Positions 11,299 to 51,521 of a stretch of 64,000 nucleotides of DNA are shown in pieces. The translations under genes were made by a program, and so were the position numbers. Positions within the stretch are counted from its first letter, which is position 1, and each line of letters starts with the position of its first letter. The notes under the pieces are model-generated. The model had not been told where the DNA came from. It saw only the letters and a list, made by a program, of their open reading frames with translations, and made no database searches. The DNA is taken from positions 124,001 through 188,000 of IMG/VR virus record IMGVR_UViG_3300035182_002586; one strand, given 5' to 3'.

Positions 11299-11638
11299 GC
11301 TCCTAGATACACCGGGTGAAGATTTCGGATGGATCGGTCCCGGCGCCCCGTTGTAGATGGACCAACAAGGCTCTGGTGCGGTAGACCGGTGACCCGGATG
11401 CAGCACTAGAAACCCGGCGCCCCCACCCGAGGGTTATGAGAGCCGGACTGAGCAATCATCGGGAGCCGCTCGTCTACCCCAAACGCCACACCAACGTGTG
11501 CCAAGGGAGGAACGGGACCGGGAAGAAGGGCCGAAAAACGGCGTTCTGACGGGCGGTAAACACCATGAGCCCCACGGCGACTGTGAGGTCGACAGAGGCA
11601 GGTAGGGGGTCATCCTTACCTGCCTCGCGCGTTTCTCG

Positions 11639-12751
11639 TCATAGCTTGGCGAAGAGGTCCTCGAACTCTCGCGGCATCGACATCCCGAGGACGTGGTGGG
11701 CAAACGCCTCCGCGAAGTTCTCGGTCGGCTTCGTGGCCCCGTAGGGGGTCACCGCAAGCGGCCCGTGCAGCAGCTTGTCCGTCTGGATCTCGACGTCCTT
11801 GTGGCCCATCGCCTGGGTGATGAACGCCTCGTCGGTCAGCTTGCCGGCGAGGTAGGCGGAGGTCTCTTTCCGGATGTCGATCCCCGTCACGGGGGAGGAA
11901 GAGAACCAGAGCATCGCCTCGTTGGAGAGGGTCGGCATCTTCGTCCCGTTCTGGCGTGCCTTCACCATGGCGAGAGCTTCCTCCGCGACCTGCTTGCGGA
12001 GCGCCGCGTGGAAGACGACCTTCTCGAACTCCTTGCGTGTCGAGAGGCTCCAGAACTCCTTGCGAAGCGTGGCGTCCTTGAAGAACTTCGCGTCGTAGCG
12101 GTGCCCGAACTCGTGGATGATCGTGTACACGTCGGAGAACCGCTTCCGGGCGCGGACGCTCAGGTGAACGGTGTCGTCGGCGCCCACGTAGTGGGCGGCT
12201 GTCTTCGCACCCAAGTGCGTGGAGAAGTAGACCATTCCGTAGAGGACTTCGGGGAACCTCGACCGGATCTTGCCCGCAGCTTCCGCGAGGGCCTCCAACG
12301 CTGCGTCGGTCTCGGCCTTCGAGACTCCCGGCATCGGGGTGATGGTGAAGCCGTCTCGGTGAAGGACCCGCTCCTCGTCCTCAGCCTCCGAAGCGATCTC
12401 CAGGGTCCTGAGACGCTTGGCCCAGGCTTGAAGCTGCATGACCACGTAGCTTCGCCAGTTGGGGTTCCGCTCGTATCCCGGGTGTGTGGGGTCTAGGAGC
12501 TTGAGGATGCTCTCCCCGTCGTAGACGAGCTTCTTGAGGGCGTTGCGCTTCGCTGTGCCGAGGGCATTGAACCAGGGGGAGGGGATGTTGCCGCCTCCAG
12601 GCAAAATCGTGTCACACACCTGGTGGATGAGCGCCTTCATGGGCTTCTCGTCCCCGTGAGCTTCGTAGTCCTGGAGCGCCTTGGCGTACTCGGGGATGAA
12701 GCTCTTGGCGACGAGGAACCGGTGGGCTACCCGCTCGACCAGGCTCGTCAC
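11639..12751 (-). CDS. zincin-like metallopeptidase domain protein with N-terminal RVAHRF motif
   Basis: IIHEFGH and TPYGATKPTENFAEAF; GTGA overlap start. Confidence 0.75.
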   Translation of the reverse strand: MTSLVERVAHRFLVAKSFIPEYAKALQDYEAHGDEKPMKALIHQVCDTILPGGGNIPSPWFNALGTAKRNALKKLVYDGESILKLLDPTHPGYERNPNWRSYVVMQLQAWAKRLRTLEIASEAEDEERVLHRDGFTITPMPGVSKAETDAALEALAEAAGKIRSRFPEVLYGMVYFSTHLGAKTAAHYVGADDTVHLSVRARKRFSDVYTIIHEFGHRYDAKFFKDATLRKEFWSLSTRKEFEKVVFHAALRKQVAEEALAMVKARQNGTKMPTLSNEAMLWFSSSPVTGIDIRKETSAYLAGKLTDEAFITQAMGHKDVEIQTDKLLHGPLAVTPYGATKPTENFAEAFAHHVLGMSMPREFEDLFAKL

Positions 12752-13371
12752 CACGTGAAGTTCCCGTCGCCCTTCTTCATGCGCAGGCCCGAGAGGATGT
12801 AGGGCCCACGTGCAAGGGAGGCGAAGAGACCGCCGGCCCACCGCTTGCGCTCGTAGTCGGACATGTCGTGCAGTGCTCGGTCGCGACGGTGCGCGATGTT
12901 GTACGCTGCGGACTTGATCATGTCGTCGCGGAACTCGCCCCAGTACGGCGCGTGCGCGATGAGCCACGTCGTGTAGTCGACGAAGCCCTCCTCGTAGAAG
13001 GGGTCACCTTCCGGGAACTTCGAGAGACTACCGTGGGTGAACTCGTGCGTGAGCTTCTCCAACGTCTGCCCGGGCTTGCCCTCGACGCTCTTGCAGATAC
13101 GGGTCTGCCCCGAGAGCATGTCGAAGCTCGCCGTTGCGCCGGCCACGTGCATCCCCGGGGGAAGAGGGAGGATCTCCGAACGGGGCTCGGTGCCGTACTC
13201 CCCAAGCGCCTGCTCCACGAAGGCGTGGATGCGAGGAGCCCACGCCTCCACGAAGCTGTTCCACTCGGGGCCAAAGACCTTGCACGTGAACGCGCGGCGG
13301 GGCGCGGAGGCGGCGTCTTCGGACGCCTTCTTGAGCATCGCGTGCACGTGTGCCGGAAGTTCGTGGTCCAT
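12748..13371 (-). CDS. HExxH metallopeptidase-like protein
   Basis: LTHEFTH...FYEEGFVDY gluzincin-like pattern. Confidence 0.7.
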   Translation of the reverse strand: MDHELPAHVHAMLKKASEDAASAPRRAFTCKVFGPEWNSFVEAWAPRIHAFVEQALGEYGTEPRSEILPLPPGMHVAGATASFDMLSGQTRICKSVEGKPGQTLEKLTHEFTHGSLSKFPEGDPFYEEGFVDYTTWLIAHAPYWGEFRDDMIKSAAYNIAHRRDRALHDMSDYERKRWAGGLFASLARGPYILSGLRMKKGDGNFTW

Positions 13372-15646: not shown

Positions 15647-15727
15647 TCCGGGATAGCCTAATGGCAAGGCACACGGCTGTTAACCGTGCGGGGAAACCCA
15701 TTCTAGGTTCGAGTCCTAGTCCCGGAG
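15647..15727 (+). tRNA. tRNA-Asn(GTT) with long variable arm
   Basis: ctgttaa loop; ggg-aaa-ccc hairpin in the variable region. Confidence 0.85.
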
Positions 15728-15732
15728 CTACT

Positions 15733-15974: not shown

Positions 15975-16055
15975 GCCGGGGTCGCTCAGTGGTAGAGCAG
16001 CAGTTTTGTAAACTGCCGTGGAGACACATCGCGGGTTCGATCCCCGCCCTCGGCT
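15975..16055 (+). tRNA. tRNA-Thr(TGT) with long variable arm
   Basis: tttgtaa loop; gtg-gaga-cac variable hairpin. Confidence 0.85.
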
Positions 16056-16097
16056 CTAGCTCGGCGCTCCCCCCTTGGGGTGGGAGCATCGGGGAAC

Positions 16098-16279: not shown

Positions 16280-16367
16280 TGCGGGGATGCTAGCAACGGC
16301 TGCTGGTCGGGCTCATAACCCGATGCCTCCAGGTCAAGTAGGGTTCGACTCCCTTCCCCCGCTACCA
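16280..16367 (+). tRNA. tRNA-fMet(CAT)-like with enlarged variable region
   Basis: 1:72 mismatch, GGG/CCC anticodon stem, ctcataa loop, CCA. Confidence 0.75.
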
Positions 16368-21400: not shown

Positions 21401-21967
21401 TACAGACCTCGCCCTACGCCGACACCTGTTCAGGGTGCTTGGCTAGAAAGGTGTTCCGATCCGGTCTGATTCGATCTGGGTTCGGCCTAACGAAACAACG
21501 CACCTAGGATCAATGCGACAATGAGGACTAGGCCGAGCAGTGCCTTCTCGATTTCGATACGGTCATCTTGGTCTTGGTGTGGTCCCGTCATCGGAGAAGG
21601 CGTCGTAGAGGCTCACGGTGTTGCCTGTTTGCTTCCTGAGGGTTCTACACAAGTGGACCCTCACAGCGGAGCTGCTTGAAGCCTGTGCTTGTGCGATGCG
21701 GTGTGTGCGGTCAGGATGAAATGCAGATCCTCCTTATCGGTCCGCCTAGCGGGCGCGAACCGTCCCACCGTGCGCTGCAACAACTCGGCGAACACCAGGT
21801 TCCCGGCTCTTGTCGACGTGGACGGTGATCTGCGTCTCCGAGAGGAGGCACGCGATCCCCAAATACACGACGACCTCACGCAGACAAGCGCGTGCGGACG
21901 CTTCGTCGGGGAAGTCGAGTTCGAGTGTGCGGCTCCCCATAACTTGGGGGGAGCACAAGATGAATTC

Positions 21968-22041
21968 ACGGTTCCAGCACGATGGTCGTGCGCGCGGTTG
22001 AAGTCCGCGAGGTGAGGTTTCGATTACCTCCCGGATCACCA
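21968..22041 (+). pseudogene. tRNA-Phe(GAA)-like with unpaired 5' acceptor strand
   Basis: D, anticodon (ttgaagt) and T arms plus CCA present; 5' strand does not pair with ccggatc. Confidence 0.6.
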
Positions 22042-22043
22042 AC

Positions 22044-22119
22044 CCCCTCGTCCTGACGGATAACAGGCGCAGCCCTCCGAAGGCTGACGTTGCAGGTTCG
22101 ACTCCTGCCGAGGGGACCA
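22044..22119 (+). tRNA. tRNA-Arg(CCG)
   Basis: ctccgaa loop, CCA. Confidence 0.85.
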
Positions 22120-26854: not shown

Positions 26855-28873
26855 ATGAACATGAACGCGAACAACCCCAACGAGAAGCTCGGTCCCGCCG
26901 AGAGGATCATCCAGACGGTCCTCGCCTACTCCGACCACATGGTCCACAACCGCCCGGGCGTCCTCACGAAGGACCCGGGTTCCGCGATCGGCGTCAAGTG
27001 GACGTACGTGACGCACAAGGTCGAGCCGAAGCCGGGCGCTGCTCCGGTCGCGGCCGCGCCGGCTGCCCCGAGGGTCAAGCGTGAGAAGGGCGCCAAGCGC
27101 GACCCGAACGCGCCCAAGGTCCCGAAGGTCAAGCGTCCGCCGATCCCGGACGGCATCAAGGTCGTCTACCAGCTCACGAAGGCGGGCAAGAAGACCATCC
27201 GCACGCGTCTCGGCGTCCTCCAGGACGACGGCAAGACGGTGAAGGCCGACAACGGCGTCACTATCGGCGAGTACCGTCCGGCGGGGCTCTTCCCGGAGGT
27301 CGCGGCCTGGATGTACAAGCAGGTCGCGGACGTCTGGAAGATCGACAACGAGTTCGCGGCGCGGTGGGCAAGCTACGCGTTCGGCCAGGAGCACCGTGAC
27401 CTCAAGGTCATCCTGGCGGCGTTCATGCTCGTCCAGAGCCGCAAGGGCGATCCGGTCCTCGACGGAGGCAAGGTCGCGTTCCTCGACGAGGACTACCGCG
27501 ACGTGGGTGAGGCGATGATGCTCATCCGCGAGAAGGGGCAGAAGGACCTCAACCCGAAGCTCCTGCTCCGCATCCGTGACCTGCTCACGATCCCGGCCGT
27601 CGCCGAGGTCAACCGCGAGCTGGGTTTCGGCCGCAGCGCCCGCAAGCCGTTCTACGGCCGGTGGGAGAAGGCGGTCGAGAAGTGGCTGCGGCACCGCGAG
27701 GAGAACCCGAAGCTCCTCCAGGGCCTCGTGAAGGCGGGCTTCCGCTCGACCGTCATGGAGCTGGCGTGCGCCATCGGTTACAAGCCGGAGACCCCGAAGT
27801 TCTTCGAGATCCTCCGGTGGAAGCAGGCGCAGGCGAAGGATGGGCGCCGGGCCCTCGACATCGGCAAGGCCGTCACGGCTGCCGAGACGTGGGAGGGGTT
27901 CACCGAGCAGCAGATCTGCGAGACGATCGTTCGTACCAAGCCCAACTACAAGCGCGTCATCGGGCTCATCCCGAAGGCCGTGGGGCTCACGCGGGCCATC
28001 GTCGCGGCGACCATCGAGGCTGGCGGGTTCTCGAACAAGGACCTGATCCAGTTCACGCCGACCCTGGAGGAGCTGGGCCTCCTCAACGTGCAGGACGTGC
28101 GTGAGCGGTGGGAGAAGGCGATGCGCGAGGCCGACGACATGCGTGCAGCGAACATCGCGCTGCGCGTCAAGTCCAAGGCGGTCGCGGAGAAGCTCCAGGA
28201 CGCGGCCGATACCGCCATCAAGGCGGCGGTGGCCGAGGTCGTGAAGGGCCTCCGGATCTACGTCGTCGTCGACCGTTCGGGCTCCATGGATGGTGCGATC
28301 GAGGCGGCCAAGAGCCACATCGGACGCTTCCTCCAGGGCTTCCCGGCAGACAAGCTGCACGTCTCCATCTTCAACACCGTGGGCCGCGAGGTGCAGATCA
28401 AGCACGCCTCGGCTGCGGGCGTCGAGAACGCCTTCCGGGGCATCCAGGCGGAGGGTGGGACGAACCATGCGGATGGCGTCAAGGTGCTCTCGAAGTACAA
28501 GCCGGCCGACGACGAGGACGTGCTGATGATCTTCATCGGCGACGAGGAGGACTCGCACCAGCACTTCGTGCCGACGGTCCAGGCTTCTGGACTCCGGCCG
28601 ATGGCCTTCGGCCTCGTGCGTGTCCTCGGTCGGCAGAGTCACGGGCGTGGCATGGCGGTGCGCAACACCGCGCAACTCCTCGGCATCCCGTGCTTCCAGA
28701 TCGACGAGAAGACGTTTGCGGACCCGTACGCGATCCCGCGCACGATCCGCAACCTCGTCGCGGCGACCCCGGTGGGGGCCGTCACGACCGCTGCTCCGCA
28801 GCGTGTCCGTGAGACCCTCGTGGACACGATCCTCAAGACGGACGTGCTCAAGAAGCCGGCCTGGGCCGCCTAG
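26855..28873 (+). CDS. Ro60-like protein (TROVE-like helical region plus C-terminal vWA)
   Basis: vWA MIDAS motifs DRSGSM, GGT and GDEED are clear; the TROVE-like assignment of the basic helical N-terminal region is inferred from architecture. Confidence 0.75.
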   Translation: MNMNANNPNEKLGPAERIIQTVLAYSDHMVHNRPGVLTKDPGSAIGVKWTYVTHKVEPKPGAAPVAAAPAAPRVKREKGAKRDPNAPKVPKVKRPPIPDGIKVVYQLTKAGKKTIRTRLGVLQDDGKTVKADNGVTIGEYRPAGLFPEVAAWMYKQVADVWKIDNEFAARWASYAFGQEHRDLKVILAAFMLVQSRKGDPVLDGGKVAFLDEDYRDVGEAMMLIREKGQKDLNPKLLLRIRDLLTIPAVAEVNRELGFGRSARKPFYGRWEKAVEKWLRHREENPKLLQGLVKAGFRSTVMELACAIGYKPETPKFFEILRWKQAQAKDGRRALDIGKAVTAAETWEGFTEQQICETIVRTKPNYKRVIGLIPKAVGLTRAIVAATIEAGGFSNKDLIQFTPTLEELGLLNVQDVRERWEKAMREADDMRAANIALRVKSKAVAEKLQDAADTAIKAAVAEVVKGLRIYVVVDRSGSMDGAIEAAKSHIGRFLQGFPADKLHVSIFNTVGREVQIKHASAAGVENAFRGIQAEGGTNHADGVKVLSKYKPADDEDVLMIFIGDEEDSHQHFVPTVQASGLRPMAFGLVRVLGRQSHGRGMAVRNTAQLLGIPCFQIDEKTFADPYAIPRTIRNLVAATPVGAVTTAAPQRVRETLVDTILKTDVLKKPAWAA

Positions 28874-28890: not shown

Positions 28891-29211
28891 ATGGCGCCCA
28901 CCATGCCCGATGATCCCCACATCTCGTTCTCGTTCGTGAGAATCGACGAAGACCTCGTTCGTCGCGTGGCCGAGCGCTGCGGGGCGAACGAGGCCGACGT
29001 TTGGGCCTACCTCAGGTCCGAATTTCAGCAGGACGACACGCTCCTGCACGCCTTCGAGTACTTCGGGGTCTTCCCCACGGGGAAGCACTACTACGAGCCG
29101 GGGAAACCCCGCCCCGATGATCCGCTTTCGCTGTCGTCGATGGGCTGCCGTGTCGTACACGCGGGCTACCCCAACAGCCTCGACTGCCGGCACACGAAAC
29201 CCACGAGGTAG
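28891..29211 (+). CDS. hypothetical protein
   Basis: ORF preceded by GGTGTA. Confidence 0.55.
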   Translation: MAPTMPDDPHISFSFVRIDEDLVRRVAERCGANEADVWAYLRSEFQQDDTLLHAFEYFGVFPTGKHYYEPGKPRPDDPLSLSSMGCRVVHAGYPNSLDCRHTKPTR

Positions 29212-29215
29212 GACC

Positions 29216-30214
29216 ATGAGCTGGAAGGACTTGCTACAGACGGAGGGTGAGACCGTCATCGCCCCTTGGGTCGAGGGCAAAGTTCTTCGCTCGGTCGATC
29301 GCACGTGGATGATCGAGGGGCGCCGTCCCCCGGAGCCCGGTTGGCACCGCTTCACCATCACGGCCCGCAAGGCCCGGTGGGAGAAGGCGGTCGACCCGCA
29401 GCCGGAGCTGCTCGTCGATGTCCAGCGTGGCTACCTGGTCGGTGACCGCCTCGTCCGGAACGACGCTCGTGTGGACCCGGACCCCGCGCTCATCACCGAG
29501 CAGTCGGAGCCCATCCATCTCGTCGAGCCCGGACTCGACCGCTTCGTACCCATCATCGCGGGCCGTGGCTTCGAGGACGGGCCCCTGATCTACCAGGGCC
29601 AGGACATGCCCTCGGGCCCCGAGGAGAGCGTCCTCCAGGCGTTCCTGGAGCGCCACATCAGCGTCAACGGCATTCCCGGCGTCACCCCCGCCCTCGACGC
29701 GGCTTTCCGCATGGAGAGCTGGCAGAGGTTGGAGGCCGACCGTCGAAGGGCTGAGATCGAGCGTCGACTCCGCGAGGAGGAAGAGAAGCGGCAGCGCGAA
29801 GAGCGCCGGCAGCAGCTCGTCCAGCAGCTCGGGGACGGTGCGGGACGCCGCCAAATGGCTCTCGTCGACTTCGCGGCCGCTGCTACGGCAGCTCTCGCGG
29901 TTGGAGGCGCGACGTACCTCGACCACCGGCGCTCTGCCGTCCGGGGGGAGATGGTGGTTCGGTTCCGGGTTCAGAACCGGAGCTTCGAGTGCACCTGCGA
30001 GGAGAAGACGCTCGCCATCGTCGACGCGGGTATCTGCCTCATCAACCACAACACCGGCGAGAAGGGCGACACCTACTTCACGCTGGAGTCGCTGCCTGCT
30101 GTCATCGCTGAGGCGGTCCGCAAGCACAAGCTCGTCGTCTTCCGTCATGTCGGGGGTGGTGATCAGCACCACGACGACCACGACGATCGGGATGACGAAG
30201 ACGAGTTCGACTGA
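29216..30214 (+). CDS. coiled-coil protein with a possible E2 (UBC)-like C-terminal domain
   Basis: DAGICL...FTLESLPAVIAEA resembles the E2 GxICL active-site segment; lies within the E1/Ubl/JAB cluster. Confidence 0.55.
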   Translation: MSWKDLLQTEGETVIAPWVEGKVLRSVDRTWMIEGRRPPEPGWHRFTITARKARWEKAVDPQPELLVDVQRGYLVGDRLVRNDARVDPDPALITEQSEPIHLVEPGLDRFVPIIAGRGFEDGPLIYQGQDMPSGPEESVLQAFLERHISVNGIPGVTPALDAAFRMESWQRLEADRRRAEIERRLREEEEKRQREERRQQLVQQLGDGAGRRQMALVDFAAAATAALAVGGATYLDHRRSAVRGEMVVRFRVQNRSFECTCEEKTLAIVDAGICLINHNTGEKGDTYFTLESLPAVIAEAVRKHKLVVFRHVGGGDQHHDDHDDRDDEDEFD

Positions 30215-30240
30215 CTCTTCGGTGTAGAAGGAAGCTCGTC

Positions 30241-30648
30241 ATGATGGAAGCAGGCGTCGTCGTCGACATCCACGGAGAGGCCCTCCACTGGCACTTGCCG
30301 GAGGGTCGATCCGGGGGGTCGCTCCCGGACCACGTGGCCAAGCTCCCCGCGTCCGAGGAAGCGTTCCGCAAGGCGAACCTCTGGTACGTCTTCTGGGACA
30401 ACCGGGACAGCATCAAGGGGTTCGCCCACAGCCATCCCGGCGGTGGGGTCCCGGGCCCCTCGTACACGGACGTGACGACCTTCGCCGCTATCGAGGATGC
30501 CCTCGGGCAGCGCCTCGACTGGTGGATCACGAGCGACCAGGCGGTCGTCGTGTGCAGGTGGGCGGGCCCTCATCGGCTCACCTACCAGGTGGAGCGCCTC
30601 GCGGAAGACCCCTCGTGGGTTGCCGAGCTGAGACGCCTCAGCAAGTGA
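30241..30648 (+). CDS. JAB/MPN+ metalloprotease
   Basis: N-terminal E, then GFAHSHPGGGVPGPSYTD (HxH-x7-S-x2-D). Confidence 0.88.
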   Translation: MMEAGVVVDIHGEALHWHLPEGRSGGSLPDHVAKLPASEEAFRKANLWYVFWDNRDSIKGFAHSHPGGGVPGPSYTDVTTFAAIEDALGQRLDWWITSDQAVVVCRWAGPHRLTYQVERLAEDPSWVAELRRLSK

Positions 30649-30696
30649 CTGGCCTCCGGGCCCAACGAATCAAAGTGGAAGGGAGGGCTAACGCCC

Positions 30697-30957
30697 ATGA
30701 TCAACGCGAACGAAGCAATGGTGAACGTGACGTGGAACCGGCAGAATGGGAACCTCGTGGACCCGGTGCCGCTCGACTCGGCGGATGGCGACGTCCGCCA
30801 GTGGATCACGGAGGCGGTGCGCGCGGGTAGCGTGCCCGGTATCCCGGCCGACGGGGCTGCGGACTTCCACGACTACGTGATCGACCGGTTCGCGCCGACC
30901 GACGCGCGCCCGTACAACCTCATCTCGGTCCGCCCGAAGACCCCCTTCGGCGCGTGA
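30697..30957 (+). CDS. ubiquitin-like (beta-grasp) protein
   Basis: 86 aa, beta-beta-alpha-beta pattern, C-terminus RPKTPFGA with a penultimate Gly; lies between JAB and E1. Confidence 0.7.
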   Translation: MINANEAMVNVTWNRQNGNLVDPVPLDSADGDVRQWITEAVRAGSVPGIPADGAADFHDYVIDRFAPTDARPYNLISVRPKTPFGA

Positions 30958-30969
30958 GAAGGGAGGCTC

Positions 30970-31311
30970 ATGCTCAACGAGAACGTGCATGAGCCTCCGC
31001 TCCACGTCCGGCACGCGACCTTGGAGCGCCTGTCTTCGGACAGCGAGTTCAAGGTCCACTGCCCTGCGTGTACGGACGGCCTACTCATCGTGAGCCGTAA
31101 CCTCGATCGCGTCATCTCGTCGCTGGATCGCTGCATCTCTTGTGGGCAGGTCATCGTCTACGAAGACGAGACGATCGCGCACGAGAAGGTGCGTCGAATG
31201 CCCGAAGAGGCTGTGCGGGAGTACGCCGAGGGGTACGCAAAGGTCCTCGAAGGGAAGGCCCCCAAGAAGACCTCCCTGTGGGACCGTCTGCTGGGAGACG
31301 AAGACCTCTAG
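30970..31311 (+). CDS. zinc-ribbon protein
   Basis: CPAC...CISC; ggagg RBS. Confidence 0.65.
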   Translation: MLNENVHEPPLHVRHATLERLSSDSEFKVHCPACTDGLLIVSRNLDRVISSLDRCISCGQVIVYEDETIAHEKVRRMPEEAVREYAEGYAKVLEGKAPKKTSLWDRLLGDEDL

Positions 31312-31328
31312 CCGGTGTACAGGGGAAC

Positions 31329-31904
31329 ATGAAGAACATCGTCGTCATCGGCGTCGGAGCCCTCGGGTCTCACGTCGTCCAGTTCCTCCGCAGCGCGGGC
31401 GCGACGATCAAGGTCATCGACTTCGATCGCGTCGAGCAGAAAAACGTCCTCTCGCAGTTCCACGGCAAGCCGAACGTCGGCAAGTCCAAGGTCATGGCCC
31501 TCCAGCAGACGATGCAGTTCCTCTGGGGGGTGAAGATCGAGGTCGTGCCGCACAAGCTCGTCACCGACAACGCCGAGAACGTCATCGGCAAGCCGGACCT
31601 CATCATTGACTGCCTCGACAACGGGGCCGCCCGCCGCGTCGTGCAGACGTACGCTCGGGCCAAGAACATCCCGTGTCTCCACGGGGCGCTCGCGGCCGAC
31701 GGTGGCTTCGCCCGCGTCGTGTGGGACGAGAAGTTCGTCATCGACGACGAGGGCACCGGAGCCGGCGCGACCTGCGAGGACGGCGAGCATCTCCCCTTCA
31801 TCAGCCTCGCGTCCGCGCACATCGCGCGCGCCGCACAGTCCTTCCTCAAGGACGGCAAGAAGGGCGGCTTCGAAATCAACCCCGGCGGTTCGACCGGGAC
31901 TTGA
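31329..31904 (+). CDS. ThiF/E1-like adenylyltransferase
   Basis: GVGALGS, IDFDRVEQKN, GKSK, DCLDN, candidate catalytic Cys in ATCED. Confidence 0.9.
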   Translation: MKNIVVIGVGALGSHVVQFLRSAGATIKVIDFDRVEQKNVLSQFHGKPNVGKSKVMALQQTMQFLWGVKIEVVPHKLVTDNAENVIGKPDLIIDCLDNGAARRVVQTYARAKNIPCLHGALAADGGFARVVWDEKFVIDDEGTGAGATCEDGEHLPFISLASAHIARAAQSFLKDGKKGGFEINPGGSTGT

Positions 31905-31949: not shown

Positions 31950-32459
31950 ATGCTGCGAACTTGTACGAAGTGTCTGGGTTCGAAGCCTGAGAAGTCTTTC
32001 GCAAAGACCTCCTCTGGGTACCGTCGTAGGGTCTGCCACACGTGCCAGAGCCGCGTAAAACGTGGTCAAGCCGATCCGACTCTTCGACGGGACTACCAAC
32101 GCAAACACCGCGAAGAGAACCCCCACATCTACGTCCTTGTTGATTGTCGGATGTCCGATCGTCGCAACAAGAGAACGGGTAACGACCTAGACACACTCTT
32201 CGTTGAGGCAGCCCTCAGCAACGGGTGTCAGTACTGTGGGGATACATCGCTCCGTATGACCCTGGACCGTATCGACAACACTCGTGCCCACGCGAAAGAC
32301 AACGTGGTTCCGTGTTGCCTCCGGTGTAACTACATCCGTGGGTCGATGCCCTACGAAGCCTGGCTTCATATGGTCCCAACGGTACGCGAGGCGAGAGAAC
32401 AGGGACTCTTTGGGGACTGGCGCTCGCAGCCTCTCAACAAGAGGCCGAAAGACCCTTGA
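31950..32459 (+). CDS. HNH-type endonuclease
   Basis: CQYCG...LDRIDN..AH...NVVPCC..CN; paralog of the 25935 gene. Confidence 0.88.
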   Translation: MLRTCTKCLGSKPEKSFAKTSSGYRRRVCHTCQSRVKRGQADPTLRRDYQRKHREENPHIYVLVDCRMSDRRNKRTGNDLDTLFVEAALSNGCQYCGDTSLRMTLDRIDNTRAHAKDNVVPCCLRCNYIRGSMPYEAWLHMVPTVREAREQGLFGDWRSQPLNKRPKDP

Positions 32460-32562: not shown

Positions 32563-32699
32563 GGGGAATACTGAGGGATGGTCCCTCACCGGAACGTAAA
32601 TCTGGCGCTAACGCACCTCGGCATCGCACCTCGCACCCGCAAGGGCGCACATCGCGGTTCCTACACGCTTTCTTGGTTCGAATCCAAGGTTCCCCACCA
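32563..32699 (+). ncRNA. tRNA-mimic RNA A1 (Tyr-like GTA) with module in the variable loop
   Basis: ggggaat/gttcccc+ACCA, D arm, ccgga-acgtaaa-tctgg, module 32629-32650, T arm. Confidence 0.8.
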
Positions 32700-32841
32700 C
32701 TCGCGACCATTAGACTGACCTCACACGCATATATGGGTTCGAGTCCCATTCCGCCCCCTCGGGGCAGATCGCCCAACTGGTAGGGCACTCGTCAGAAAAA
32801 CGAGCTTGCAAAAGCAACCAGGTCTGTCACTCGGACGCGAG
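32700..32841 (+). ncRNA. YrlA-like circularly permuted tRNA-mimic RNA B1 (GAA loop)
   Basis: Terminal stem ctcgcg/cgcgag; order is T arm, looped acceptor, D arm, anticodon arm. Confidence 0.8.
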
Positions 32842-32879
32842 TAACTTTTTTCTCTCAGCCACGACTCAGGACACGTTAC

Positions 32880-33021
32880 GCCCGTTCACAGAGGATCGGT
32901 TCCTCGCCTCCCTTCCACGGAGGAGCGAAAGCTCTAACTCCAGATCTGCCCCTCGCATCCGCAAGGACGCACCCCGCAGTTCTCACAAGACATCTCGGTT
33001 CGACTCCGAGGACGGGCTCCA
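32880..33021 (+). ncRNA. tRNA-mimic RNA A2 (Gly-like TCC)
   Basis: gcccgtt/gacgggc+TCCA, cctcc-cttccac-ggagg, module 32951-32972. Confidence 0.8.
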
Positions 33022-33057
33022 CACTCTCTCGCTCTTTGCAGCTCTCTCGACACTTTC

Positions 33058-33182
33058 GGCGGATCGGGGCTAGGGCCCCCACTTTCCCTCATACGGAACG
33101 ATCCGGCTCGTCTCCTCGCACCCGCAAGGGCGCACCCCCGACGAGCCCACAAGCCTGCCTGGTTCGAATCCAGGATCCGCCT
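33058..33182 (+). ncRNA. tRNA-mimic RNA A3 (Met-like CAT)
   Basis: ggcggat/atccgcc, ttcc-ctcatac-ggaa, module 33114-33135. Confidence 0.78.
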
Positions 33183-33184
33183 CT

Positions 33185-33312
33185 GGGGCGACCATCACGC
33201 ACTGCTCACACGCAATATCGTCCAATGGTAGGACGGTGGCCTTAAAAGCCGCTTGTACAGGTTCGAGTCCTGTTACTGCAACCAAAGTCCAGCAGTGCAC
33301 CTCGGACGCCCC
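33185..33312 (+). ncRNA. RNA C1: module strands clamping a complete tRNA-like unit (TAA, 33211-33284)
   Basis: ggggcg/cgcccc and gcactgct/agcagtgc stems around a cloverleaf ending ACCA. Confidence 0.78.
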
Positions 33313-33337
33313 TAACTTCTCTCGTCACGTCACTCTT

Positions 33338-33471
33338 GGAGGATCATAGAGGGTCGGTCCCTCACCTGCCATTTCAAGCAGGAGCCTAACAGCTCCCAGG
33401 ACTGCACCTCGCATCCGCAAGGACGCACCAAGCAGTTCTCACACGCCCCGGTTCGACTCCGGAATCCTCCG
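33338..33471 (+). ncRNA. tRNA-mimic RNA A4 (8-nt loop catttcaa)
   Basis: ggaggat/atcctcc, module 33407-33428, T arm. Confidence 0.78.
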
Positions 33472-33504
33472 CCGCCCCGCAAGGGGTTGTTACTGACACG
33501 AATG

Positions 33505-33644
33505 TGGCCGTCACAGGGGATCGGTTCCCCACCTGCTTGCAACGCAGGAGCCTAACAGCTCTTCCAGGATCGCACCTCGCACCCGCAAGGGAGCACTCAG
33601 CGGTTCTCACACGCCAACCGGTTCGACTCCGGGACGGCCAGCCA
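33505..33644 (+). ncRNA. tRNA-mimic RNA A5 (Cys-like GCA)
   Basis: tggccgt/acggcca+GCCA, cctgc-ttgcaac-gcagg, module 33575-33596. Confidence 0.8.
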
Positions 33645-33677
33645 CACTAGTTGCAGGGTTTGCTCTCGTCACGCATA

Positions 33678-33816
33678 TGCCCGTCACAGGGGATCGGTTC
33701 CCCACCTGCAATTGGAGCAGGAGCCTAAACAGCTCCCAGGATCACACCTCGCACCCGCAAGGGCGCATCCCGTGGTTCTCACACGCAAATCCGGTTCGAC
33801 TCCGGGACGGGCGACC
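33678..33816 (+). ncRNA. tRNA-mimic RNA A6 (Gln-like TTG)
   Basis: tgcccgt/acgggcg, cctgc-aattgga-gcagg, module 33747-33768. Confidence 0.8.
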
Positions 33817-33960
33817 GCTTCGCGACCATCAGACCGACCTCACAAGCAATGTTGGTTCGAATCCAACCTCCCCCTCCATTTACGGGGGAGTAGCCTAACT
33901 GGCAAAGGCACTCGTCAAATAAACGAGCAATCAACCAGGTCTGTCACTCGGACGCGAAGC
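33817..33960 (+). ncRNA. YrlA-like circularly permuted tRNA-mimic RNA B2 (AAT loop)
   Basis: gcttcgcg/cgcgaagc terminal stem; same order as B1. Confidence 0.8.
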
Positions 33961-33999: not shown

Positions 34000-34074
34000 G
34001 GTGACCATAGCCTAAAGGTAAGGCACTGGATTGTGGCTCCAGCTATACGGGTTCGATTCCCGTTGGTCACCCCA
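34000..34074 (+). tRNA. tRNA-His(GTG)
   Basis: G-1:C73, ttgtggc loop, CCA. Confidence 0.92.
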
Positions 34075-35594: not shown

Positions 35595-35681
35595 GTGTAC
35601 GTTGCGCGTCATGGGCGCAGACAACGGGACACCAAGCACACGGGTCGAAGCACTCATCAACGCCTGTTGGTGCCCCCGCTG

Positions 35682-36389
35682 ATGGCCATCCTCCCCCTCG
35701 ACACCGCAGAGTGGCCGTCGCGTCGCTACAAGGTCGTCTATGCAGATCCTTGTTGGAAGTACTACGGGGACCCTGATAAGGACCAGGCGGCGGGCAAACA
35801 CTACAACGGCATGACCCTCGATGAACTGTCAGCTCTTCCGGTGGGCCGCCTCTTGGCGCCTCCCGCTGTGGTCTTCATGTGGACCACCTCGCCCAAGTTG
35901 AGTGAGAGTCTCGACCTCATCAAGAGGTGGGGGCTGCACTACATCGGCGTCGCCTTCGTGTGGGTCAAGACCACCAACGATGGACGCGTCATCCACGGGC
36001 AAGGGGTCCGCCCTTCCATCACGAAGTCCACGACGGAGTACGTGCTGGCCGCCTCCACGGTGAAGCAAGGGCGCCCTCTGCCGCTCCTCACGGAAGCGCA
36101 GCCACAGGTCATCCTCGCGCCTCGCCCCGGCGGGCTGCACTCCAGCAAGCCTGTGGAGGTCCGAGAGGGCATCGAGGCTCTCTACGGGCCCATGCCGAGG
36201 GTCGAGTTGTTCTGCCGTGGTGAGCCCGCCCCCGGGTGGGACGGGTGGGGTAACGAAGCTGGAGACCTGACGGTCCAGCCGGAGCTGGCGCAGTCTCCCG
36301 CCTTGCGAGAGAAGCTCGTGAAGCAAGCCGAGGAGGGATCGATGCGAGAGGTATTCGACCTCGCGATGTCCCTCGACGACGAAGAGTAG
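35682..36389 (+). CDS. MT-A70 family adenine methyltransferase
   Basis: VVYADPCW (DPPW variant), FMWTT, FVWVK, HSSKP, VELFCR...GWDGWGNE. Confidence 0.88.
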   Translation: MAILPLDTAEWPSRRYKVVYADPCWKYYGDPDKDQAAGKHYNGMTLDELSALPVGRLLAPPAVVFMWTTSPKLSESLDLIKRWGLHYIGVAFVWVKTTNDGRVIHGQGVRPSITKSTTEYVLAASTVKQGRPLPLLTEAQPQVILAPRPGGLHSSKPVEVREGIEALYGPMPRVELFCRGEPAPGWDGWGNEAGDLTVQPELAQSPALREKLVKQAEEGSMREVFDLAMSLDDEE

Positions 36390-36409: not shown

Positions 36410-37264
36410 ATGGCCAGATCTCCGATGGGAGCCGCAAAGGATGCGGCGAGAGAAGCTCGTGCGCGCACGAAGCTCCGGAAAGAGGTCCGGGAAGAGCTGT
36501 ACGAAGAGATCGAGGCGAAGGTCCGCGTCGAGGTGCGAGAGCAGCTCGAACGAGAAGTGCGGGACGAGATCGCCACCAAGATCCGGGACGAGCAGGCGTC
36601 GGGCCCCGTGGTTCAGGCTCACCTGGACAACGCCAACGAGCTGCTCCAGGGGATCCAGCTCGACGCAGAGGCGCACGTGGTGGCGTCCACGCGAGAGGCT
36701 CAGGCCCTCGTGGTCCCTCTGCGATCGTCGAAGCGGGTGCGGAACTTCCTGGAGGTGTTCCTCTACCTGACGGGGATCCCGCTCTCCATCACCCTTCTCG
36801 TGGTCCTGCATACGGGCTTCCTGAGCATCGCTTTCCTCGTCCCCATGGTCATCTGGTACTACGGGGTGCAGGCTGTCTCGGAGTCGAACGAGAAGCACTT
36901 TGCAGCCATGCAGCAGGACATCGAGCACGCAGAGGAGGTAGCTCGAAGCTACCGAGCCCTCTCGAATCGCGCGGCTGCGATCCGGGCCGAGTTGCCGAGC
37001 CTTCCGAACACGGCGCGGCTCAAAGCGCGGCTGCGAACGGTGACCTCTGAGAGGGCGAGGATCACGCAGTGGGCGAACGCAGGTCTTCGTGGGCTCGACC
37101 AAGCCAGGTCCGAGGTGCGGGATCGGATGCTCGGGGAGGCCGACCTAGACCGCATCCTGGCCATCCCCACGGACCACCGGCAGCGTGTAGCCCCTCTCCC
37201 CAACTACGACGAGCAGGCTGAGGCGGAAGCCGAAGTGGAAGAGGCCCTACGAGGGCGCGCATGA
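36410..37264 (+). CDS. coiled-coil membrane protein (2 TM)
   Basis: ORF preceded by GGTGTA; two hydrophobic segments. Confidence 0.7.
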   Translation: MARSPMGAAKDAAREARARTKLRKEVREELYEEIEAKVRVEVREQLEREVRDEIATKIRDEQASGPVVQAHLDNANELLQGIQLDAEAHVVASTREAQALVVPLRSSKRVRNFLEVFLYLTGIPLSITLLVVLHTGFLSIAFLVPMVIWYYGVQAVSESNEKHFAAMQQDIEHAEEVARSYRALSNRAAAIRAELPSLPNTARLKARLRTVTSERARITQWANAGLRGLDQARSEVRDRMLGEADLDRILAIPTDHRQRVAPLPNYDEQAEAEAEVEEALRGRA

Positions 37265-37887
37265 AGGACTTCCCGACCATCCCCACCGTGAGGGAGTTCC
37301 TCCCAAGCGACCTCACCTGGCACGTCTTCGACAAGATCGACGGCTCGAACATCCGCGCCGAGTGGAACCGCAAGCAGGGCTTCTACAAGTTCGGTTCCCG
37401 CAAGCAGCTCCTCGCAACGGACTCGGGGCTCCTCAACGAGTCCCGCGAGCTGGTGCTCAACAAGTACGGCGACCCTCTCTCGGCCATCTTCCGCGCACAG
37501 AGGTACGAGAGTGCGGTCGCGTTCTTCGAGTTCTACGGCCCGAGTTCGGCGTTCGGGGCGCACGTCATGGACGAACCCCACAAGGTGACCCTGATCGACG
37601 TGAGCCCGTACAAGCGGGGCATCCTCCCGCCCACGGAGTTCCTCCGTCACTACGGCCACCTTGAAGTACCGGCGCTCATCCACCAAGGCCCCATCGACGA
37701 GGAGTTCGTCGAGAACGTCCACGAGGGGCGCCTGGAGGGGGTGACGGACGAAGGGGTGATCTGCAAGGCCAAGGCTGACCGGAAGACCGAGGTTCCCGTC
37801 ATGTGCAAGATCAAGAGCCGTGTGTGGCTCGACCGGTTGCGCACCTACTGCAAGGACGACCAGGCCCTCTTCGATCGCCTCAAGTAG
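37261..37887 (+). CDS. ATP-dependent RNA ligase-like nucleotidyltransferase
   Basis: DKIDGSN (KxDG), FGSR, FEFYG, EGVICK and KIK motifs; no OB domain. Confidence 0.8.
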   Translation: MKDFPTIPTVREFLPSDLTWHVFDKIDGSNIRAEWNRKQGFYKFGSRKQLLATDSGLLNESRELVLNKYGDPLSAIFRAQRYESAVAFFEFYGPSSAFGAHVMDEPHKVTLIDVSPYKRGILPPTEFLRHYGHLEVPALIHQGPIDEEFVENVHEGRLEGVTDEGVICKAKADRKTEVPVMCKIKSRVWLDRLRTYCKDDQALFDRLK

Positions 37888-51159: not shown

Positions 51160-51515
51160 GGGAGCGCCCCGGTTTCGACGGGGGAAGGAAGTTTTCGCTA
51201 GCGTGTAGGCCCGCGCTCGTAGGGCCTCAAAAGATTCGAGCCGAAACAAACGCCAACGACAACGGCACCGTCATCACCGCTCTCAAGGCGGCTGCGTGAC
51301 CGATCCCGCCCCAAGGTAGTCCTCGTAGGGGCATATGGGATCGTCAAACACTAGGGCTGGCCAAAGCCTCGGGCTCCCGGGGGTCAGGCGAGACAAGCAG
51401 GGAAGCTAGGTCGCGGCCAAATCTGCGAACCCCGTCGAGGGGGCAAGCTCGAATACGCACGTAGAAAGCGACGACAGAGATCTCTCGGACGCGGGTTCGA
51501 CTCCCGCCGCTTCCA
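51160..51515 (+). ncRNA. ssrA: tmRNA; tag (A)ANDNGTVITALKAAA* at 51252-51299
   Basis: gggagcg/cgcttcc acceptor with G3:U70, GGTTTCGAC, GGAC-GCGGGTTCGACTCCCGC, ANDN...AAA tag. Confidence 0.95.
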
Positions 51516-51521
51516 CCCATC

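What the first reader, a model, noticed from the sequence alone, without database searches (positions are those of the whole stretch)
32591..33925. The mimic RNAs display a panel of different anticodon loops, many non-decoding
The loops are acGTAaa, caGAAaa, ctTCCac, ctCATac, ctTAAaa, catttcaa (8 nt), ttGCAac, aaTTGga and caAATaa. Four 7-nt loops lack U33, one loop has 8 nt, and type B has no free acceptor end. A conserved scaffold with a variable anticodon loop looks like a decoy or sensor library rather than translational tRNAs. Some copies keep matching identity elements (A2: Gly-type acceptor with U73-CCA), so they might still be aminoacylated.
Basis: partly seen in the sequence, partly recalled or inferred. 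Interest (0 to 1): 0.7.

Follow-up and report, generated by a model that had tools for sequence, protein, structure and literature searches.

The report
tRNA-shaped Y-RNA-like array beside phage Ro60
Nine tRNA-shaped RNAs in this huge phage belong to a widespread, unannotated family that carries one conserved extra arm and sits next to a divergent Ro60-like gene, so they look like Y-RNA-type tRNA mimics rather than ordinary tRNAs, each with its own anticodon loop.

Summary
Window 32563-33960 (+) holds nine contiguous tRNA-like genes with exactly the listed loops: four 7-nt loops lack U33 and one loop has 8 nt.

They come in two circularly permuted topologies. Type A has a free acceptor end and an extra arm capped by GCAA. 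Type B has a capped acceptor, and its ends lie in that arm, as in YrlA.

Covariance models found 94 type A and 40 type B copies in about 40 huge-phage loci, with strong covariation. They found none in 883 kb of unrelated viral DNA.

The clusters usually start 40-300 nt after a conserved module: vWA protein, orf365, JAB, ThiF. The vWA protein is a structure-level Ro60 homologue. Its helical domain alone finds only the three Ro60 structures at Z 8.7-9.6; the next hit is 5.9. Pfam TROVE misses it.

Loop behaviour across the family:
- Only 57% of 7-nt type A loops have U33, against 95% in neighbouring true tRNAs.
- About 20% of type A loops have 8-9 nt.
- Loops are conserved by class: GUA never has U33, and UCC always has U33 and U73.
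- The discriminator base tracks the anticodon.

Best reading: Y-RNA-like tRNA mimics whose extra arm is the protein handle. Binding, processing and charging are untested, and no RNA-seq run was listed. The decoy idea is neither excluded nor shown.

The parts
26855..28873 (+). Divergent Ro60-like protein (672 aa, P0001): N-terminal beta region, helical-repeat domain at residues 147-462, vWA domain at 466-640.
   Evidence: Pfam finds only VWA_2. Foldseek on the full AF2 model ranks Ro60/TROVE structures first. The helical domain alone, aligned against 48,161 PDB chains, has Rsr, Ro60 and phage phiLo Ro60 as its top three, Z 9.6, 9.2 and 8.7, with the next hit at 5.9. ESM features of the helical part point to TROVE/DUF2828.
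29117..30214 (+). orf365, the conserved second gene of the module; function unknown.
   Evidence: Syntenic in nearly all related loci. No family match was found.
30241..30648 (+). JAB/JAMM-like protein, third gene of the module.
   Evidence: Weak Prok-JAB match, phrog_5556 match, conserved synteny.
31140..31904 (+). ThiF/MoeB-type E1-like adenylyltransferase, the last gene before the RNA array in relatives.
   Evidence: Pfam ThiF E 5e-26, NCBIfam ThiF/MoeB/UbaA matches, synteny. The true start is uncertain.
31950..32459 (+). HNH / endonuclease VII-like gene inserted between ThiF and the array; probably a mobile insertion.
   Evidence: PHROG endonuclease families. It is absent at this position in most relatives.
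32563..32699 (+). A1. Type A, loop ACGTAAA (GUA, C33), A73, CCA encoded.
   Evidence: 131.8 bits. Orthologues keep GUA without U33.
32700..32841 (+). B1. Type B (ends in the extra arm, acceptor capped), loop CAGAAAA (GAA, A33), followed by a T-run at 32845-32851.
   Evidence: Rfam YrlA partial match, 26.5 bits. R2 142.4 bits. Fold. Terminator-like site.
32880..33021 (+). A2. Type A, loop CTTCCAC (UCC, U33), U73, CCA.
   Evidence: 138.5 bits. The UCC class has U33 and U73 in 4 of 4 members.
33058..33184 (+). A3. Type A without the small V1 hairpin, loop CTCATAC (CAU), U73.
   Evidence: 101.1 bits.
33185..33312 (+). B2. Aberrant type B: a tRNA-ordered body (D arm, anticodon arm, T arm; ARAGORN tRNA-Leu-UAA at 33211-33284) nested inside the arm helix, loop CTTAAAA.
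   Evidence: tRNA 58.7 bits, two acceptor mismatches; R2 32.8 bits. The anticodon reads UGA in related strains (33244 A>G).
33338..33474 (+). A4. Type A, 8-nt loop CATTTCAA, G73.
   Evidence: 138.1 bits. The L002 relative has the 7-nt loop CTTTCAA.
33506..33643 (+). A5. Type A, loop TTGCAAC (GCA), A73.
   Evidence: 138.2 bits.
33679..33816 (+). A6. Type A, loop AATTGGA (UUG, A33), G73.
   Evidence: 140.3 bits. It is 89% identical to A5 outside the loop and 0 of 7 identical in the loop.
33817..33960 (+). B3. Type B, loop CAAATAA (AAU, A33). The acceptor-capping loop reads T-CCA-TTTAC.
   Evidence: (150.8 bits).
34001..34074 (+). Ordinary tRNA-His(GUG) that closes the array.
   Evidence: 67.9 bits.
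37261..37887 (+). RNA ligase (Rnl-type). A homologue lies directly after the array in locus L145.
   Evidence: Pfam RNA_ligase, weak. phrog_548 RNA ligase. tblastn places the L145 homologue at 11050-11310.

Best explanation
The nine elements belong to a conserved, so far unannotated family of tRNA-shaped non-coding RNAs of huge phages.

**Architecture.** All share an acceptor stem, a D arm, a T arm with the canonical GGTTCGAnTCC loop, and usually an anticodon arm. In the variable region they also carry:
- a small hairpin (V1);
- a long arm (V2) with an invariant CUCG internal loop;
- a conserved ACAAGCA-type linker.

**Two topologies.** The family exists as two circular permutations. Type A has tRNA-like free ends and a GNRA-capped V2. 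Type B has its ends in V2 and a capped acceptor, which is the layout of bacterial YrlA Y RNAs.

**Most likely mechanism.** These are the Y-RNA-type partners of the divergent Ro60-like (helical ring plus vWA) protein encoded just upstream. V2 would be the protein handle. The tRNA-like body, with its own anticodon loop and matching discriminator base, would be the effector module. That module would engage proteins that read tRNA identity, such as aminoacyl-tRNA synthetases, modification enzymes or anticodon nucleases, and tether or sequester them.

**Shown here:** the structures, the family, the permutation, the synteny, the loop statistics and the Ro60-like fold.

**Inferred:** that Ro60-like binds V2, that the arm stays in the mature RNA, what the effectors are, and whether the RNAs are charged.
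For: 1. **Structure.** MFE folds and consensus folds with compensatory changes agree. On 94 type A and 40 type B homologues, 95% of cells are paired, with covariation scores of 0.89 and 0.80 against 0.21 for shuffles. A close strain shows compensatory pairs at 32674/32686, 32958/32967 and 33069/33076.
2. **YrlA layout.** B1 matches Rfam YrlA over the T arm, capped acceptor and D arm (model consensus).
3. **Linkage.** Loci fetched through the vWA protein hold 94 type A and 40 type B copies, usually 40-300 nt after ThiF in the order vWA, orf365, JAB, ThiF. There were 0 hits in 883 kb of unrelated viral loci. In the phage's own 529-kb genome, only this array matches the type A model strongly.
4. 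**Ro60-like fold.**
5. **V2 is the constant part.** Some members keep V2 and the tRNA elbow but lack the anticodon arm (L137:973, L145:10784, L002:6458, L163:18802). One type B member is reduced to the stem alone (L002 6387-6458).
6. **Loops carry identity.** There are class-specific loops, the discriminator matches the anticodon in 32 of 63 cases (shuffle p 0.005), and U33 is deficient compared with 95% in true tRNAs.
7. **Precedent.** Y RNAs are encoded next to Ro60 in bacteria and phages and mimic tRNA (PMC4201824, 10.1101/312249). Phage phiLo Ro60 binds phage Y-like RNAs (PMC12135203).
Against: - Pfam TROVE does not detect the protein, and sequence searches against PDB see only the vWA domain.
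- The fold evidence is of middling strength. Z is about 9, in the range that helical repeats can reach by chance, and Foldseek on the helical domain alone gave only generic ARM/HEAT hits.
- The YrlA stem part of the Rfam model does not match. The V2 motif (CUCG opposite CGCAC/CCA) is not the CGAA-type Ro60 site.
- In YrlA the stem replaces the anticodon loop. Here it leaves from the variable region.
- In the phage of L002 the array is not next to the module (L162 had no hit).
- Three other conserved genes lie between the Ro60-like gene and the array, and any of them could be the real partner.
- There is no expression or binding data.
Confidence: 0.5

Rival explanations
1. These are real tRNA genes with odd gene structures. 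In type A, V1 and V2 would be an intervening sequence in the variable region that is cut out and religated. Type B genes would be permuted tRNA genes, joined at the V2 helix and opened at the acceptor loop. Both routes would yield ordinary tRNAs.
For: - G1, 7-bp acceptor stems, and position 74-76 reading C[C/T][A/G] in most copies, with CCA encoded in 29 of 94.
- The discriminator base tracks the anticodon.
- 15 of 40 type B acceptor caps start with N-CCA followed by a spacer, as in permuted tRNA genes.
- RNA ligase genes lie nearby: adjacent in L145, 3.3 kb away in the window, and there is an RtcB match in the genome.
Against: - Some members keep V2 but have no anticodon arm, and one is a stem-only member.
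- 43% of 7-nt loops lack U33 and 20% of loops have 8-9 nt, so many products could not decode normally.
- In the window, seven of the nine anticodons are already covered by canonical phage tRNAs.
- V2 is conserved and covaries along its whole length, including a GNRA cap.
- No bulge-helix-bulge motif is visible by eye, and no phage or bacterial endonuclease for such splicing is known (my own knowledge).
Confidence: 0.15
2. These are arm-bearing tRNAs that are charged and used as tRNAs, either in translation or in another aminoacyl-tRNA-dependent reaction. The extra arm would be an accessory element unrelated to the Ro60-like protein.
For: - Canonical loop and identity set in the UCC/U73 class, 4 of 4 members.
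- Anticodon-discriminator match with p 0.005.
- Purine at position 37 in 64 of 70 loops.
- tRNA-type T loop invariant in 94 of 94 copies.
- Some ordinary class I tRNAs of this phage also carry short extra variable hairpins.
Against: - The GUA class never has U33 (0 of 10), and 8-9-nt loops are common.
- Type B genes have capped acceptors, and arm-only variants exist.
- The array is redundant with canonical tRNAs.
- The tight linkage to the protein module would be unexplained.
Confidence: 0.15
3. These are free-standing decoys or sponges for host anticodon nucleases or other tRNA-targeting defences, with no role for the Ro60-like protein.
For: - A diversified panel of anticodon loops on one scaffold.
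- Non-U33 is conserved in the GUA class, and G33 occurs in half of the GUU class. Both belong to the queuosine family of tRNAs, which is attacked by known anticodon nucleases (my own knowledge).
- An RNA-repair context (RNA ligase, RtcB).
- Phage tRNAs are known to counter tRNA-cleaving defences (my own knowledge).
Against: - No nuclease, cleavage or host is known here.
- It does not explain the conserved V2 arm and linker, the arm-only variants, or the synteny with the module.
- Changing position 33 might equally abolish recognition by a nuclease.
Confidence: 0.12
4. These are decaying tRNA pseudogenes or tRNA-derived repeats without function.
For: Tandem repeats, odd loops, and most copies missed by ARAGORN and by the Rfam tRNA model.
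Against: - Strong covariation across about 40 phage genomes.
- Class-specific loop conservation.
- Conserved position in the genome.
- In a close strain the spacers vary much more than the RNAs do.
Confidence: 0.01

Closest known systems
YrlA (Rfam RF02553), the tRNA-like bacterial and phage Y RNAs that partner with Ro60/Rsr
   Same: - Type B has the same gene order: 5' stem strand, T arm, capped acceptor stem, D arm, 3' stem strand.
- It shares the tRNA-type T and D loops.
- It has a long terminal stem with a conserved internal loop.
- It is encoded near a Ro60-type protein, and several copies can lie side by side.
- M. smegmatis YrlA is cut by RNase P and receives CCA. That matches the N-CCA motif in many type B caps.
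   Different: - Here a complete anticodon arm is kept, and the terminal stem leaves from the variable region rather than replacing the anticodon loop.
- The stem motif differs: CUCG loop and ACAAGCA linker, not the CGAA-type site.
- The Rfam score is far below threshold (26.5 against 69 bits).
- The protein partner is so divergent that Pfam TROVE misses it.
- Type A, with a free acceptor and a capped arm, has no described YrlA counterpart.
Class II tRNAs and other tRNAs with long variable arms
   Same: Type A is a cloverleaf with a free, often CCA-ended 7-bp acceptor stem. Its extra structure sits exactly where the long variable arm of Leu, Ser and Tyr tRNAs sits.
   Different: - The insertion is about 60 nt with two hairpins and a conserved internal loop. 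It occurs on Gly-, Met-, Glu-, Gln-, Cys- and Asn-type bodies.
- Many loops lack U33 or have 8-9 nt.
- The D arm is compact, with three nucleotides between it and the acceptor stem.
Circularly permuted tRNA genes (Cyanidioschyzon merolae), split tRNAs (Nanoarchaeum) and two-piece permuted tmRNA
   Same: Types A and B are circular permutations of one fold. Many type B genes carry 3' half, N73, CCA, spacer, then 5' half. A helix holds the two ends together.
   Different: No bulge-helix-bulge motif is evident. The junction lies in the variable region. The joining helix is itself the most conserved element, and it persists in type A, where no joining is needed.
Phage phiLo Ro60 with its Yrl1 and Yrl2 RNAs, and the Ro60-Y RNA-PNPase (RYPER) machine
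   Same: A phage-encoded Ro60-fold protein with phage-encoded structured RNAs next to it. Neither phage encodes PNPase, so a host effector would have to be recruited (PMC12135203).
   Different: The phiLo RNAs are simple stem-bulge-stem Y RNAs, not tRNA-shaped. Here there are up to nine tRNA-shaped RNAs with distinct anticodon loops, plus an extra JAB/ThiF gene context.

Membership tests
YrlA (Rfam RF02553) | Reaches the family's gathering score (69 bits). | tested here: not met
   The best match is B1 at 26.5 bits, E 0.005, covering model positions 30-81 only.
YrlA (Rfam RF02553) | tRNA-like module in the order T arm, capped acceptor stem, D arm, with tRNA-type T and D loops. | tested here: met
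   Met by B1 and B3 and by the other matches to the type B model in relatives (40 hits in all). B2 is an exception: its body is in tRNA order.
YrlA (Rfam RF02553) | The 5' and 3' ends pair into a long stem with a conserved internal loop (the Ro60-binding module). | tested here: inconclusive
   The stem and a conserved loop are present and covary. The motif differs from the YrlA consensus, and binding was not testable.
YrlA (Rfam RF02553) | The stem continues from the anticodon stem, with no anticodon loop. | tested here: not met
   A full 5-bp anticodon stem with a 7-nt loop is present. The stem leaves from the variable region.
YrlA / Y RNA | Encoded near a Ro60 (TROVE plus vWA) gene. | tested here: inconclusive
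   Pfam TROVE is absent from the genome. A protein 3.7 kb upstream has a Ro60-like fold, and the linkage is conserved in about 38 loci.
YrlA / Y RNA | Bound by Ro60 in vivo or in vitro. | not testable with these tools
   The complex prediction was not run for a protein with RNA.
tRNA (Rfam RF00005) | Detected by the tRNA covariance model or by ARAGORN. | tested here: not met
   Only the body nested in B2 (33211-33284) is detected. The six type A genes, B1 and B3 are not.
tRNA (functional decoder) | A 7-nt anticodon loop with U33 and a purine at position 37. | tested here: not met
   Five of the nine window loops fail. Across the family, U33 occurs in 40 of 70 seven-nt loops and 19 of 94 loops have 8-9 nt. 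Neighbouring tRNAs have U33 in 701 of 737. A2, A3, A5 and B2 do meet the feature.
tRNA (functional decoder) | Free 7-bp acceptor stem with a discriminator and a CCA end, and aminoacylation. | tested here: inconclusive
   Type A has the stem, G1, an N73 that matches the anticodon class, and CCA-like ends. Charging is not testable here.
Permuted or intron-containing tRNA genes | A bulge-helix-bulge or other known splice motif at the junction, and a spliced product. | tested here: inconclusive
   No BHB motif was seen when the V2 consensus was inspected. No RNA runs were listed, so a spliced product could not be looked for.
Ro60 / TROVE protein family | Match to Pfam TROVE (PF05731). | tested here: not met
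   also absent from the L002 record.
Ro60 / TROVE protein family | Helical-repeat ring followed by a C-terminal vWA domain, with structural similarity to solved Ro60. | tested here: met
   The domain order is seen in the AF2 model. Full-length Foldseek top hits are Ro60. The helical domain alone has Rsr, Ro60 and phiLo Ro60 as its top three, at Z 9.6, 9.2 and 8.7, with the next hit at 5.9. The Z values are moderate.

The most novel reading that the evidence does not exclude
Huge phages would encode a programmable set of tRNA/Y-RNA chimeras. A common arm docks each RNA on a Ro60-like ring. Each RNA's anticodon loop and discriminator select one tRNA-identity reader, such as a given synthetase, modification enzyme or anticodon nuclease. 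The phage would then tether, sequester or monitor specific branches of the host's tRNA machinery. Some members would be charged, and type B members would be opened by RNase P into two-piece CCA-ended molecules.
Probability: 0.25. Interest if true: 0.9.

Novelty: new variant of a known kind. Interest (0 to 1): 0.8.

Why it matters
- What the tRNA-like module of bacterial Y RNAs binds has been an open question since 2014. This family offers natural variation to address it: dozens of phages, two topologies, and anticodon loops and discriminators that vary by class on a constant scaffold. Those features point to readers of tRNA identity and can be tested directly.
- It reveals a large clade of Ro60-like proteins that profile searches miss. 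More than 1,400 relatives were found in metagenomic databases, together with a conserved Ro60-like/orf365/JAB/ThiF gene module of unknown role.
- Annotation pipelines currently miss these RNAs. ARAGORN and Rfam call only one of the nine here, and the one related GenBank record found in the phage collection leaves them unannotated.

Tried and rejected
**Searches that found nothing useful**
- DNA search of GenBank phages with the region: only tRNA-sized chance hits.
- A degenerate motif scan of viral contigs: more than 116 mostly chance hits, later reused as a negative control.
- The metagenome scan with the arm apex gave 36 loci, of which only L125, L137, L145 and L146 were true relatives.
- RNA-seq: none was listed. 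All holders are DNA metagenomes.

**The Ro60-like protein by sequence**
- Pfam TROVE was negative in the phage's own genome, in the L002 record and in 26 homologues.
- phmmer and hmmsearch against PDB found only the vWA domain.
- Foldseek with the helical domain alone gave only generic ARM/HEAT repeats.
- VIA re-ranking of the full model put vWA-only hits level with Ro60.

**Other attempts**
- Complex prediction of the protein with B1 RNA was not folded. It is no evidence either way.
- orf365 and the 113-aa ORF at 30970-31311 remained unexplained. The 113-aa ORF has no C-terminal GG, so it is not an obvious ubiquitin-like partner for ThiF/JAB.
- The genome shows no CCA-adding enzyme and no PNPase.

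**Ideas considered and dropped**
- K-turn: there are no tandem G·A pairs.
- Group I intron: the insert is too short.
- tmRNA relative: a normal tmRNA lies elsewhere in the window.
- Hypermutation of the loops: a close strain shows only 1 of 45 changes in a loop.
- Weak YrlA hits elsewhere in the genome are artefacts of adjacent tRNA genes.
Full report
**Context**

The window is bases 124001-188000 of a 528,957-bp IMG/VR virus record. It carries 53 ARAGORN tRNA calls and a tmRNA. In the region of the finding, only one element (33211-33284) and the flanking tRNA-His are recognised as tRNAs.

**1. The observation**

Reading the sequence and folding each unit without constraints shows nine contiguous units on the + strand.

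| Unit | Coordinates |
|---|---|
| A1 | 32563-32699 |
| B1 | 32700-32841 |
| A2 | 32880-33021 |
| A3 | 33058-33184 |
| B2 | 33185-33312 |
| A4 | 33338-33474 |
| A5 | 33506-33643 |
| A6 | 33679-33816 |
| B3 | 33817-33960 |

- Four 7-nt loops lack U33 (A1, B1, A6, B3), and A4 has 8 nt.
- A2 has U73 followed by CCA.

**2. Anatomy**

Type A (six copies) is a cloverleaf with a free 7-bp acceptor stem. Between the anticodon arm and the T arm it carries:
- a small hairpin (V1);
- a long arm (V2), built as a 7-8-bp helix, a 5x5 internal loop, two base pairs, an A·C mismatch, a 3-bp helix and a GCAA loop;
- a conserved single-stranded linker, TCACACGC.

Type B (B1, B3) has the same parts in a circularly permuted order. 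The RNA starts and ends in the V2 helix. Going 5' to 3' it runs through the linker, T arm, an acceptor stem closed by a loop, D arm, anticodon arm and V1.

The sequence motifs on the two strands of V2 are shared by types A and B. The two types are therefore one architecture, opened at different places.

B2 is aberrant. A body in normal tRNA order is nested in the V2 helix, with two mismatches in its acceptor stem.

Each type B gene directly abuts the 3' end of a type A gene (32699/32700, 33184/33185, 33816/33817).

RNAalifold finds compensatory changes in 21 of 33 type A pairs and 18 of 37 type B pairs, even with few sequences.

**3. Link to Y RNAs**

With relaxed thresholds, Rfam matches B1 to YrlA over the T arm, capped acceptor and D arm. 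The score is 26.5 bits, E 0.005, well under the 69-bit threshold.

The YrlA consensus shows the one large difference. In YrlA the terminal stem continues from the anticodon stem and there is no anticodon loop (also stated in 10.1101/312249). Here the anticodon arm is complete and the terminal stem leaves from the variable region.

**4. The family**

- Motif scans found true relatives in a 133-kb viral contig (L002) and in metagenome contigs (L125, L137, L145, L146).
- A covariance model of type A (R1) finds only the six local copies strongly in the 529-kb genome.
- Fifty-six huge-phage loci were fetched through the upstream vWA protein. Together with the earlier loci they yielded 94 type A matches and 40 type B matches (R2).
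- One hundred unrelated viral loci (883 kb) gave none.
- On these alignments 95% of cells are paired. Covariation scores are 0.89 (A) and 0.80 (B), against about 0.21 in shuffles and about 0.1 with slid partners.
- These alignments are fitted to the models, which inflates pairing somewhat. The margin is nevertheless very large.
- A strain about 95% identical, found in a wastewater metagenome, shows compensatory changes in stems and fast-changing spacers.

**5. Genomic context**

tblastn with the window's proteins shows a conserved order: vWA protein, orf365, JAB-like, ThiF-like, then the RNA array.

- In about 30 loci the array starts 40-300 nt after ThiF.
- In the window an HNH endonuclease gene is inserted between ThiF and the array.
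- About 38 of about 46 searchable distinct loci hold at least one type A or B copy.
- In the L002 phage the array lies elsewhere.
- The only related GenBank record found, Virus Rctr197k, has the same order and unannotated type B RNAs after ThiF.

**6. The vWA protein is Ro60-like**

Sequence methods see only the vWA domain, and Pfam TROVE finds nothing in the genome.

| Test | Result |
|---|---|
| AF2 model (pLDDT 77.7) | Helical-repeat domain at 147-462, then vWA |
| Foldseek against PDB, full model | Best hits are Ro60/TROVE structures over about 550 columns |
| Helical domain modelled alone, aligned to 48,161 PDB chains | The only three hits with Z at or above 8 are D. radiodurans Rsr (9.6), Xenopus Ro60 (9.2) and Thermus phage phiLo Ro60 (8.7). 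Each covers 241-265 of 326 residues. The next hit is 5.9. |
| ESM-feature search with the helical part alone | Nearest neighbours are TROVE and DUF2828 clusters (score 0.85-0.87, a lead only) |
| Foldseek on the helical domain alone | Only generic ARM/HEAT hits |

I put the chance that this is a true, very divergent Ro60 homologue at about 0.75.

The protein family is large. At least 1,482 relatives were found among the scored candidates, on contigs of up to 660 kb.

**7. Loops and identity across the family**

Type A loops:
- 70 of 94 loops have 7 nt and 19 have 8-9 nt.
- U33 occurs in 40 of 70 seven-nt loops. It occurs in 701 of 737 canonical tRNAs of the same loci.
- Positions 37 and 38 stay tRNA-like, with a purine at position 37 in 64 of 70.

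Loops are class-specific:

| Class | n | Position 33 | Discriminator |
|---|---|---|---|
| GUA | 10 | never U | A73 in 8 |
| UCC | 4 | always U | always U73 |
| GUU | 6 | G33 in 3 | G73 in 5 |
| UUC | 4 | U in 3 | G73 in 3 |
| CAU | 6 | A33 in 4 | A73 in 4 |

- The discriminator equals the E. coli-type discriminator for the anticodon in 32 of 63 cases (shuffle p 0.005). The identity table comes from established knowledge, for example PMC9976931.
- Paralogues within a genome share scaffolds but not loops. A5 and A6 are 89% identical outside the loop and 0 of 7 identical inside it.
- A scaffold tree groups paralogues by genome more than by anticodon: 64 label changes against 76 in shuffles. This fits scaffold homogenisation with retention of loop and discriminator, but the tree rests on only 123 columns.
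- In the close strain only one of 45 substitutions lies in a loop (B2, UAA to UGA). There is therefore no hypermutation.

Type B loops:
- 31 of 40 loops have 7 nt, and U33 occurs in 19 of those 31.
- 15 of 40 acceptor caps begin with N-CCA, where about 0.6 would be expected by chance. B3 is one of them.
- This suggests that many type B RNAs are opened at the acceptor, as reported for M. smegmatis YrlA (RNase P cleavage followed by CCA addition; 10.1101/312249).

**8. What is constant and what is optional**

Several members keep the acceptor, D arm, T arm, V2 and linker but have no anticodon arm (L137:973, L145:10784, L002:6458, L163:18802). One type B member is only the V2 stem with a small loop (L002 6387-6458).

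The most conserved unpaired nucleotides are the CUCG of the V2 internal loop and the ACAAGCA linker. The extra arm and the tRNA elbow therefore form the core, and the anticodon arm is a variable add-on.

**9. Interpretation**

The best-supported reading is a Y-RNA-type system. V2 is the handle for the Ro60-like protein, and the tRNA-like body is the effector module.

The new feature is that the effector module carries individual anticodon loops and matching discriminators. In type A it also has a free acceptor end. This points to effectors that read tRNA identity.

Still inferred:
- which protein binds V2 (orf365, JAB and ThiF are equally linked to the array);
- whether the arm stays in the mature RNA;
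- whether any member is charged;
- whether the RNAs act as tethers, gates, decoys or sensors.

The main rival is that V1 and V2 are removed to give ordinary tRNAs. The tRNA-like ends, the N-CCA caps and the nearby RNA ligases favour it. The arm-only variants, the non-decoding loops and the redundancy with canonical tRNAs argue against it. No RNA data were available to decide.

**10. Novelty**

Y RNAs that mimic tRNA and sit next to Ro60 are known in bacteria and phages (PMC4201824, PMC12135203, PMC7824862). I found no description of the following in the held literature:
- the type A topology;
- the variable-region exit of the stem;
- arrays with diversified, class-conserved anticodon loops;
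- this divergent Ro60 clade with its JAB/ThiF module.

I file it as a new variant of a known kind.

Noticed in passing
window 15647-15728, 15975-16056, 16281-16363: Otherwise canonical phage tRNA-Asn(GUU), tRNA-Thr(UGU) and tRNA-Met(CAU) are 82-83 nt long. Each folds with a short extra hairpin (3 bp plus a 4-nt loop, GAAA or GAGA in the Asn and Thr genes) in the variable region, which is unusual for class I tRNAs.
   Followed up: partly
window 51160-51517; L002 3560-3916: The phage encodes a tmRNA with tag ANDNGTVITALKAAA. The relative in L002 has a tmRNA with tag ANDNGFAVAA.
   Followed up: no
window 29117-31904 and about 45 related loci: A conserved gene string, orf365, JAB-like and ThiF-like E1, always follows the Ro60-like gene. 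No ubiquitin-like partner or function was identified. The 113-aa ORF at 30970-31311 has no C-terminal GG.
   Followed up: partly
window 31950-32459: An HNH / endonuclease VII-like gene sits between ThiF and the RNA array here but not in most relatives. It is probably a mobile insertion.
   Followed up: partly
window 33244: In related strains from four other metagenomes, the middle anticodon base of B2 is G instead of A (UAA becomes UGA).
   Followed up: partly
window 33475-33490: A small GCAA-capped hairpin (CCCC GCAA GGGG) lies in the spacer between A4 and A5. Its role is unknown.
   Followed up: no
G000:C1:116020-116316 (outside the window): The genome's only RtcB match covers just the C-terminal part of the family model (positions 338-426) in a 138-aa open frame. 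It may be a fragment or a split gene.
   Followed up: no
L156 (KX853510.1) 11129-13078, 21630-21835, 21969-22100: In Virus Rctr197k the Ro60-like gene is annotated only as a misc_feature, 'similar to conserved hypothetical protein'. Two type B-like RNAs after ThiF are unannotated, and the second directly follows a normal tRNA-Met.
   Followed up: partly
window 35595-36389: An MT-A70 family methyltransferase gene lies 1.6 kb downstream of the array. A homologue also lies near the array in L145.
   Followed up: no
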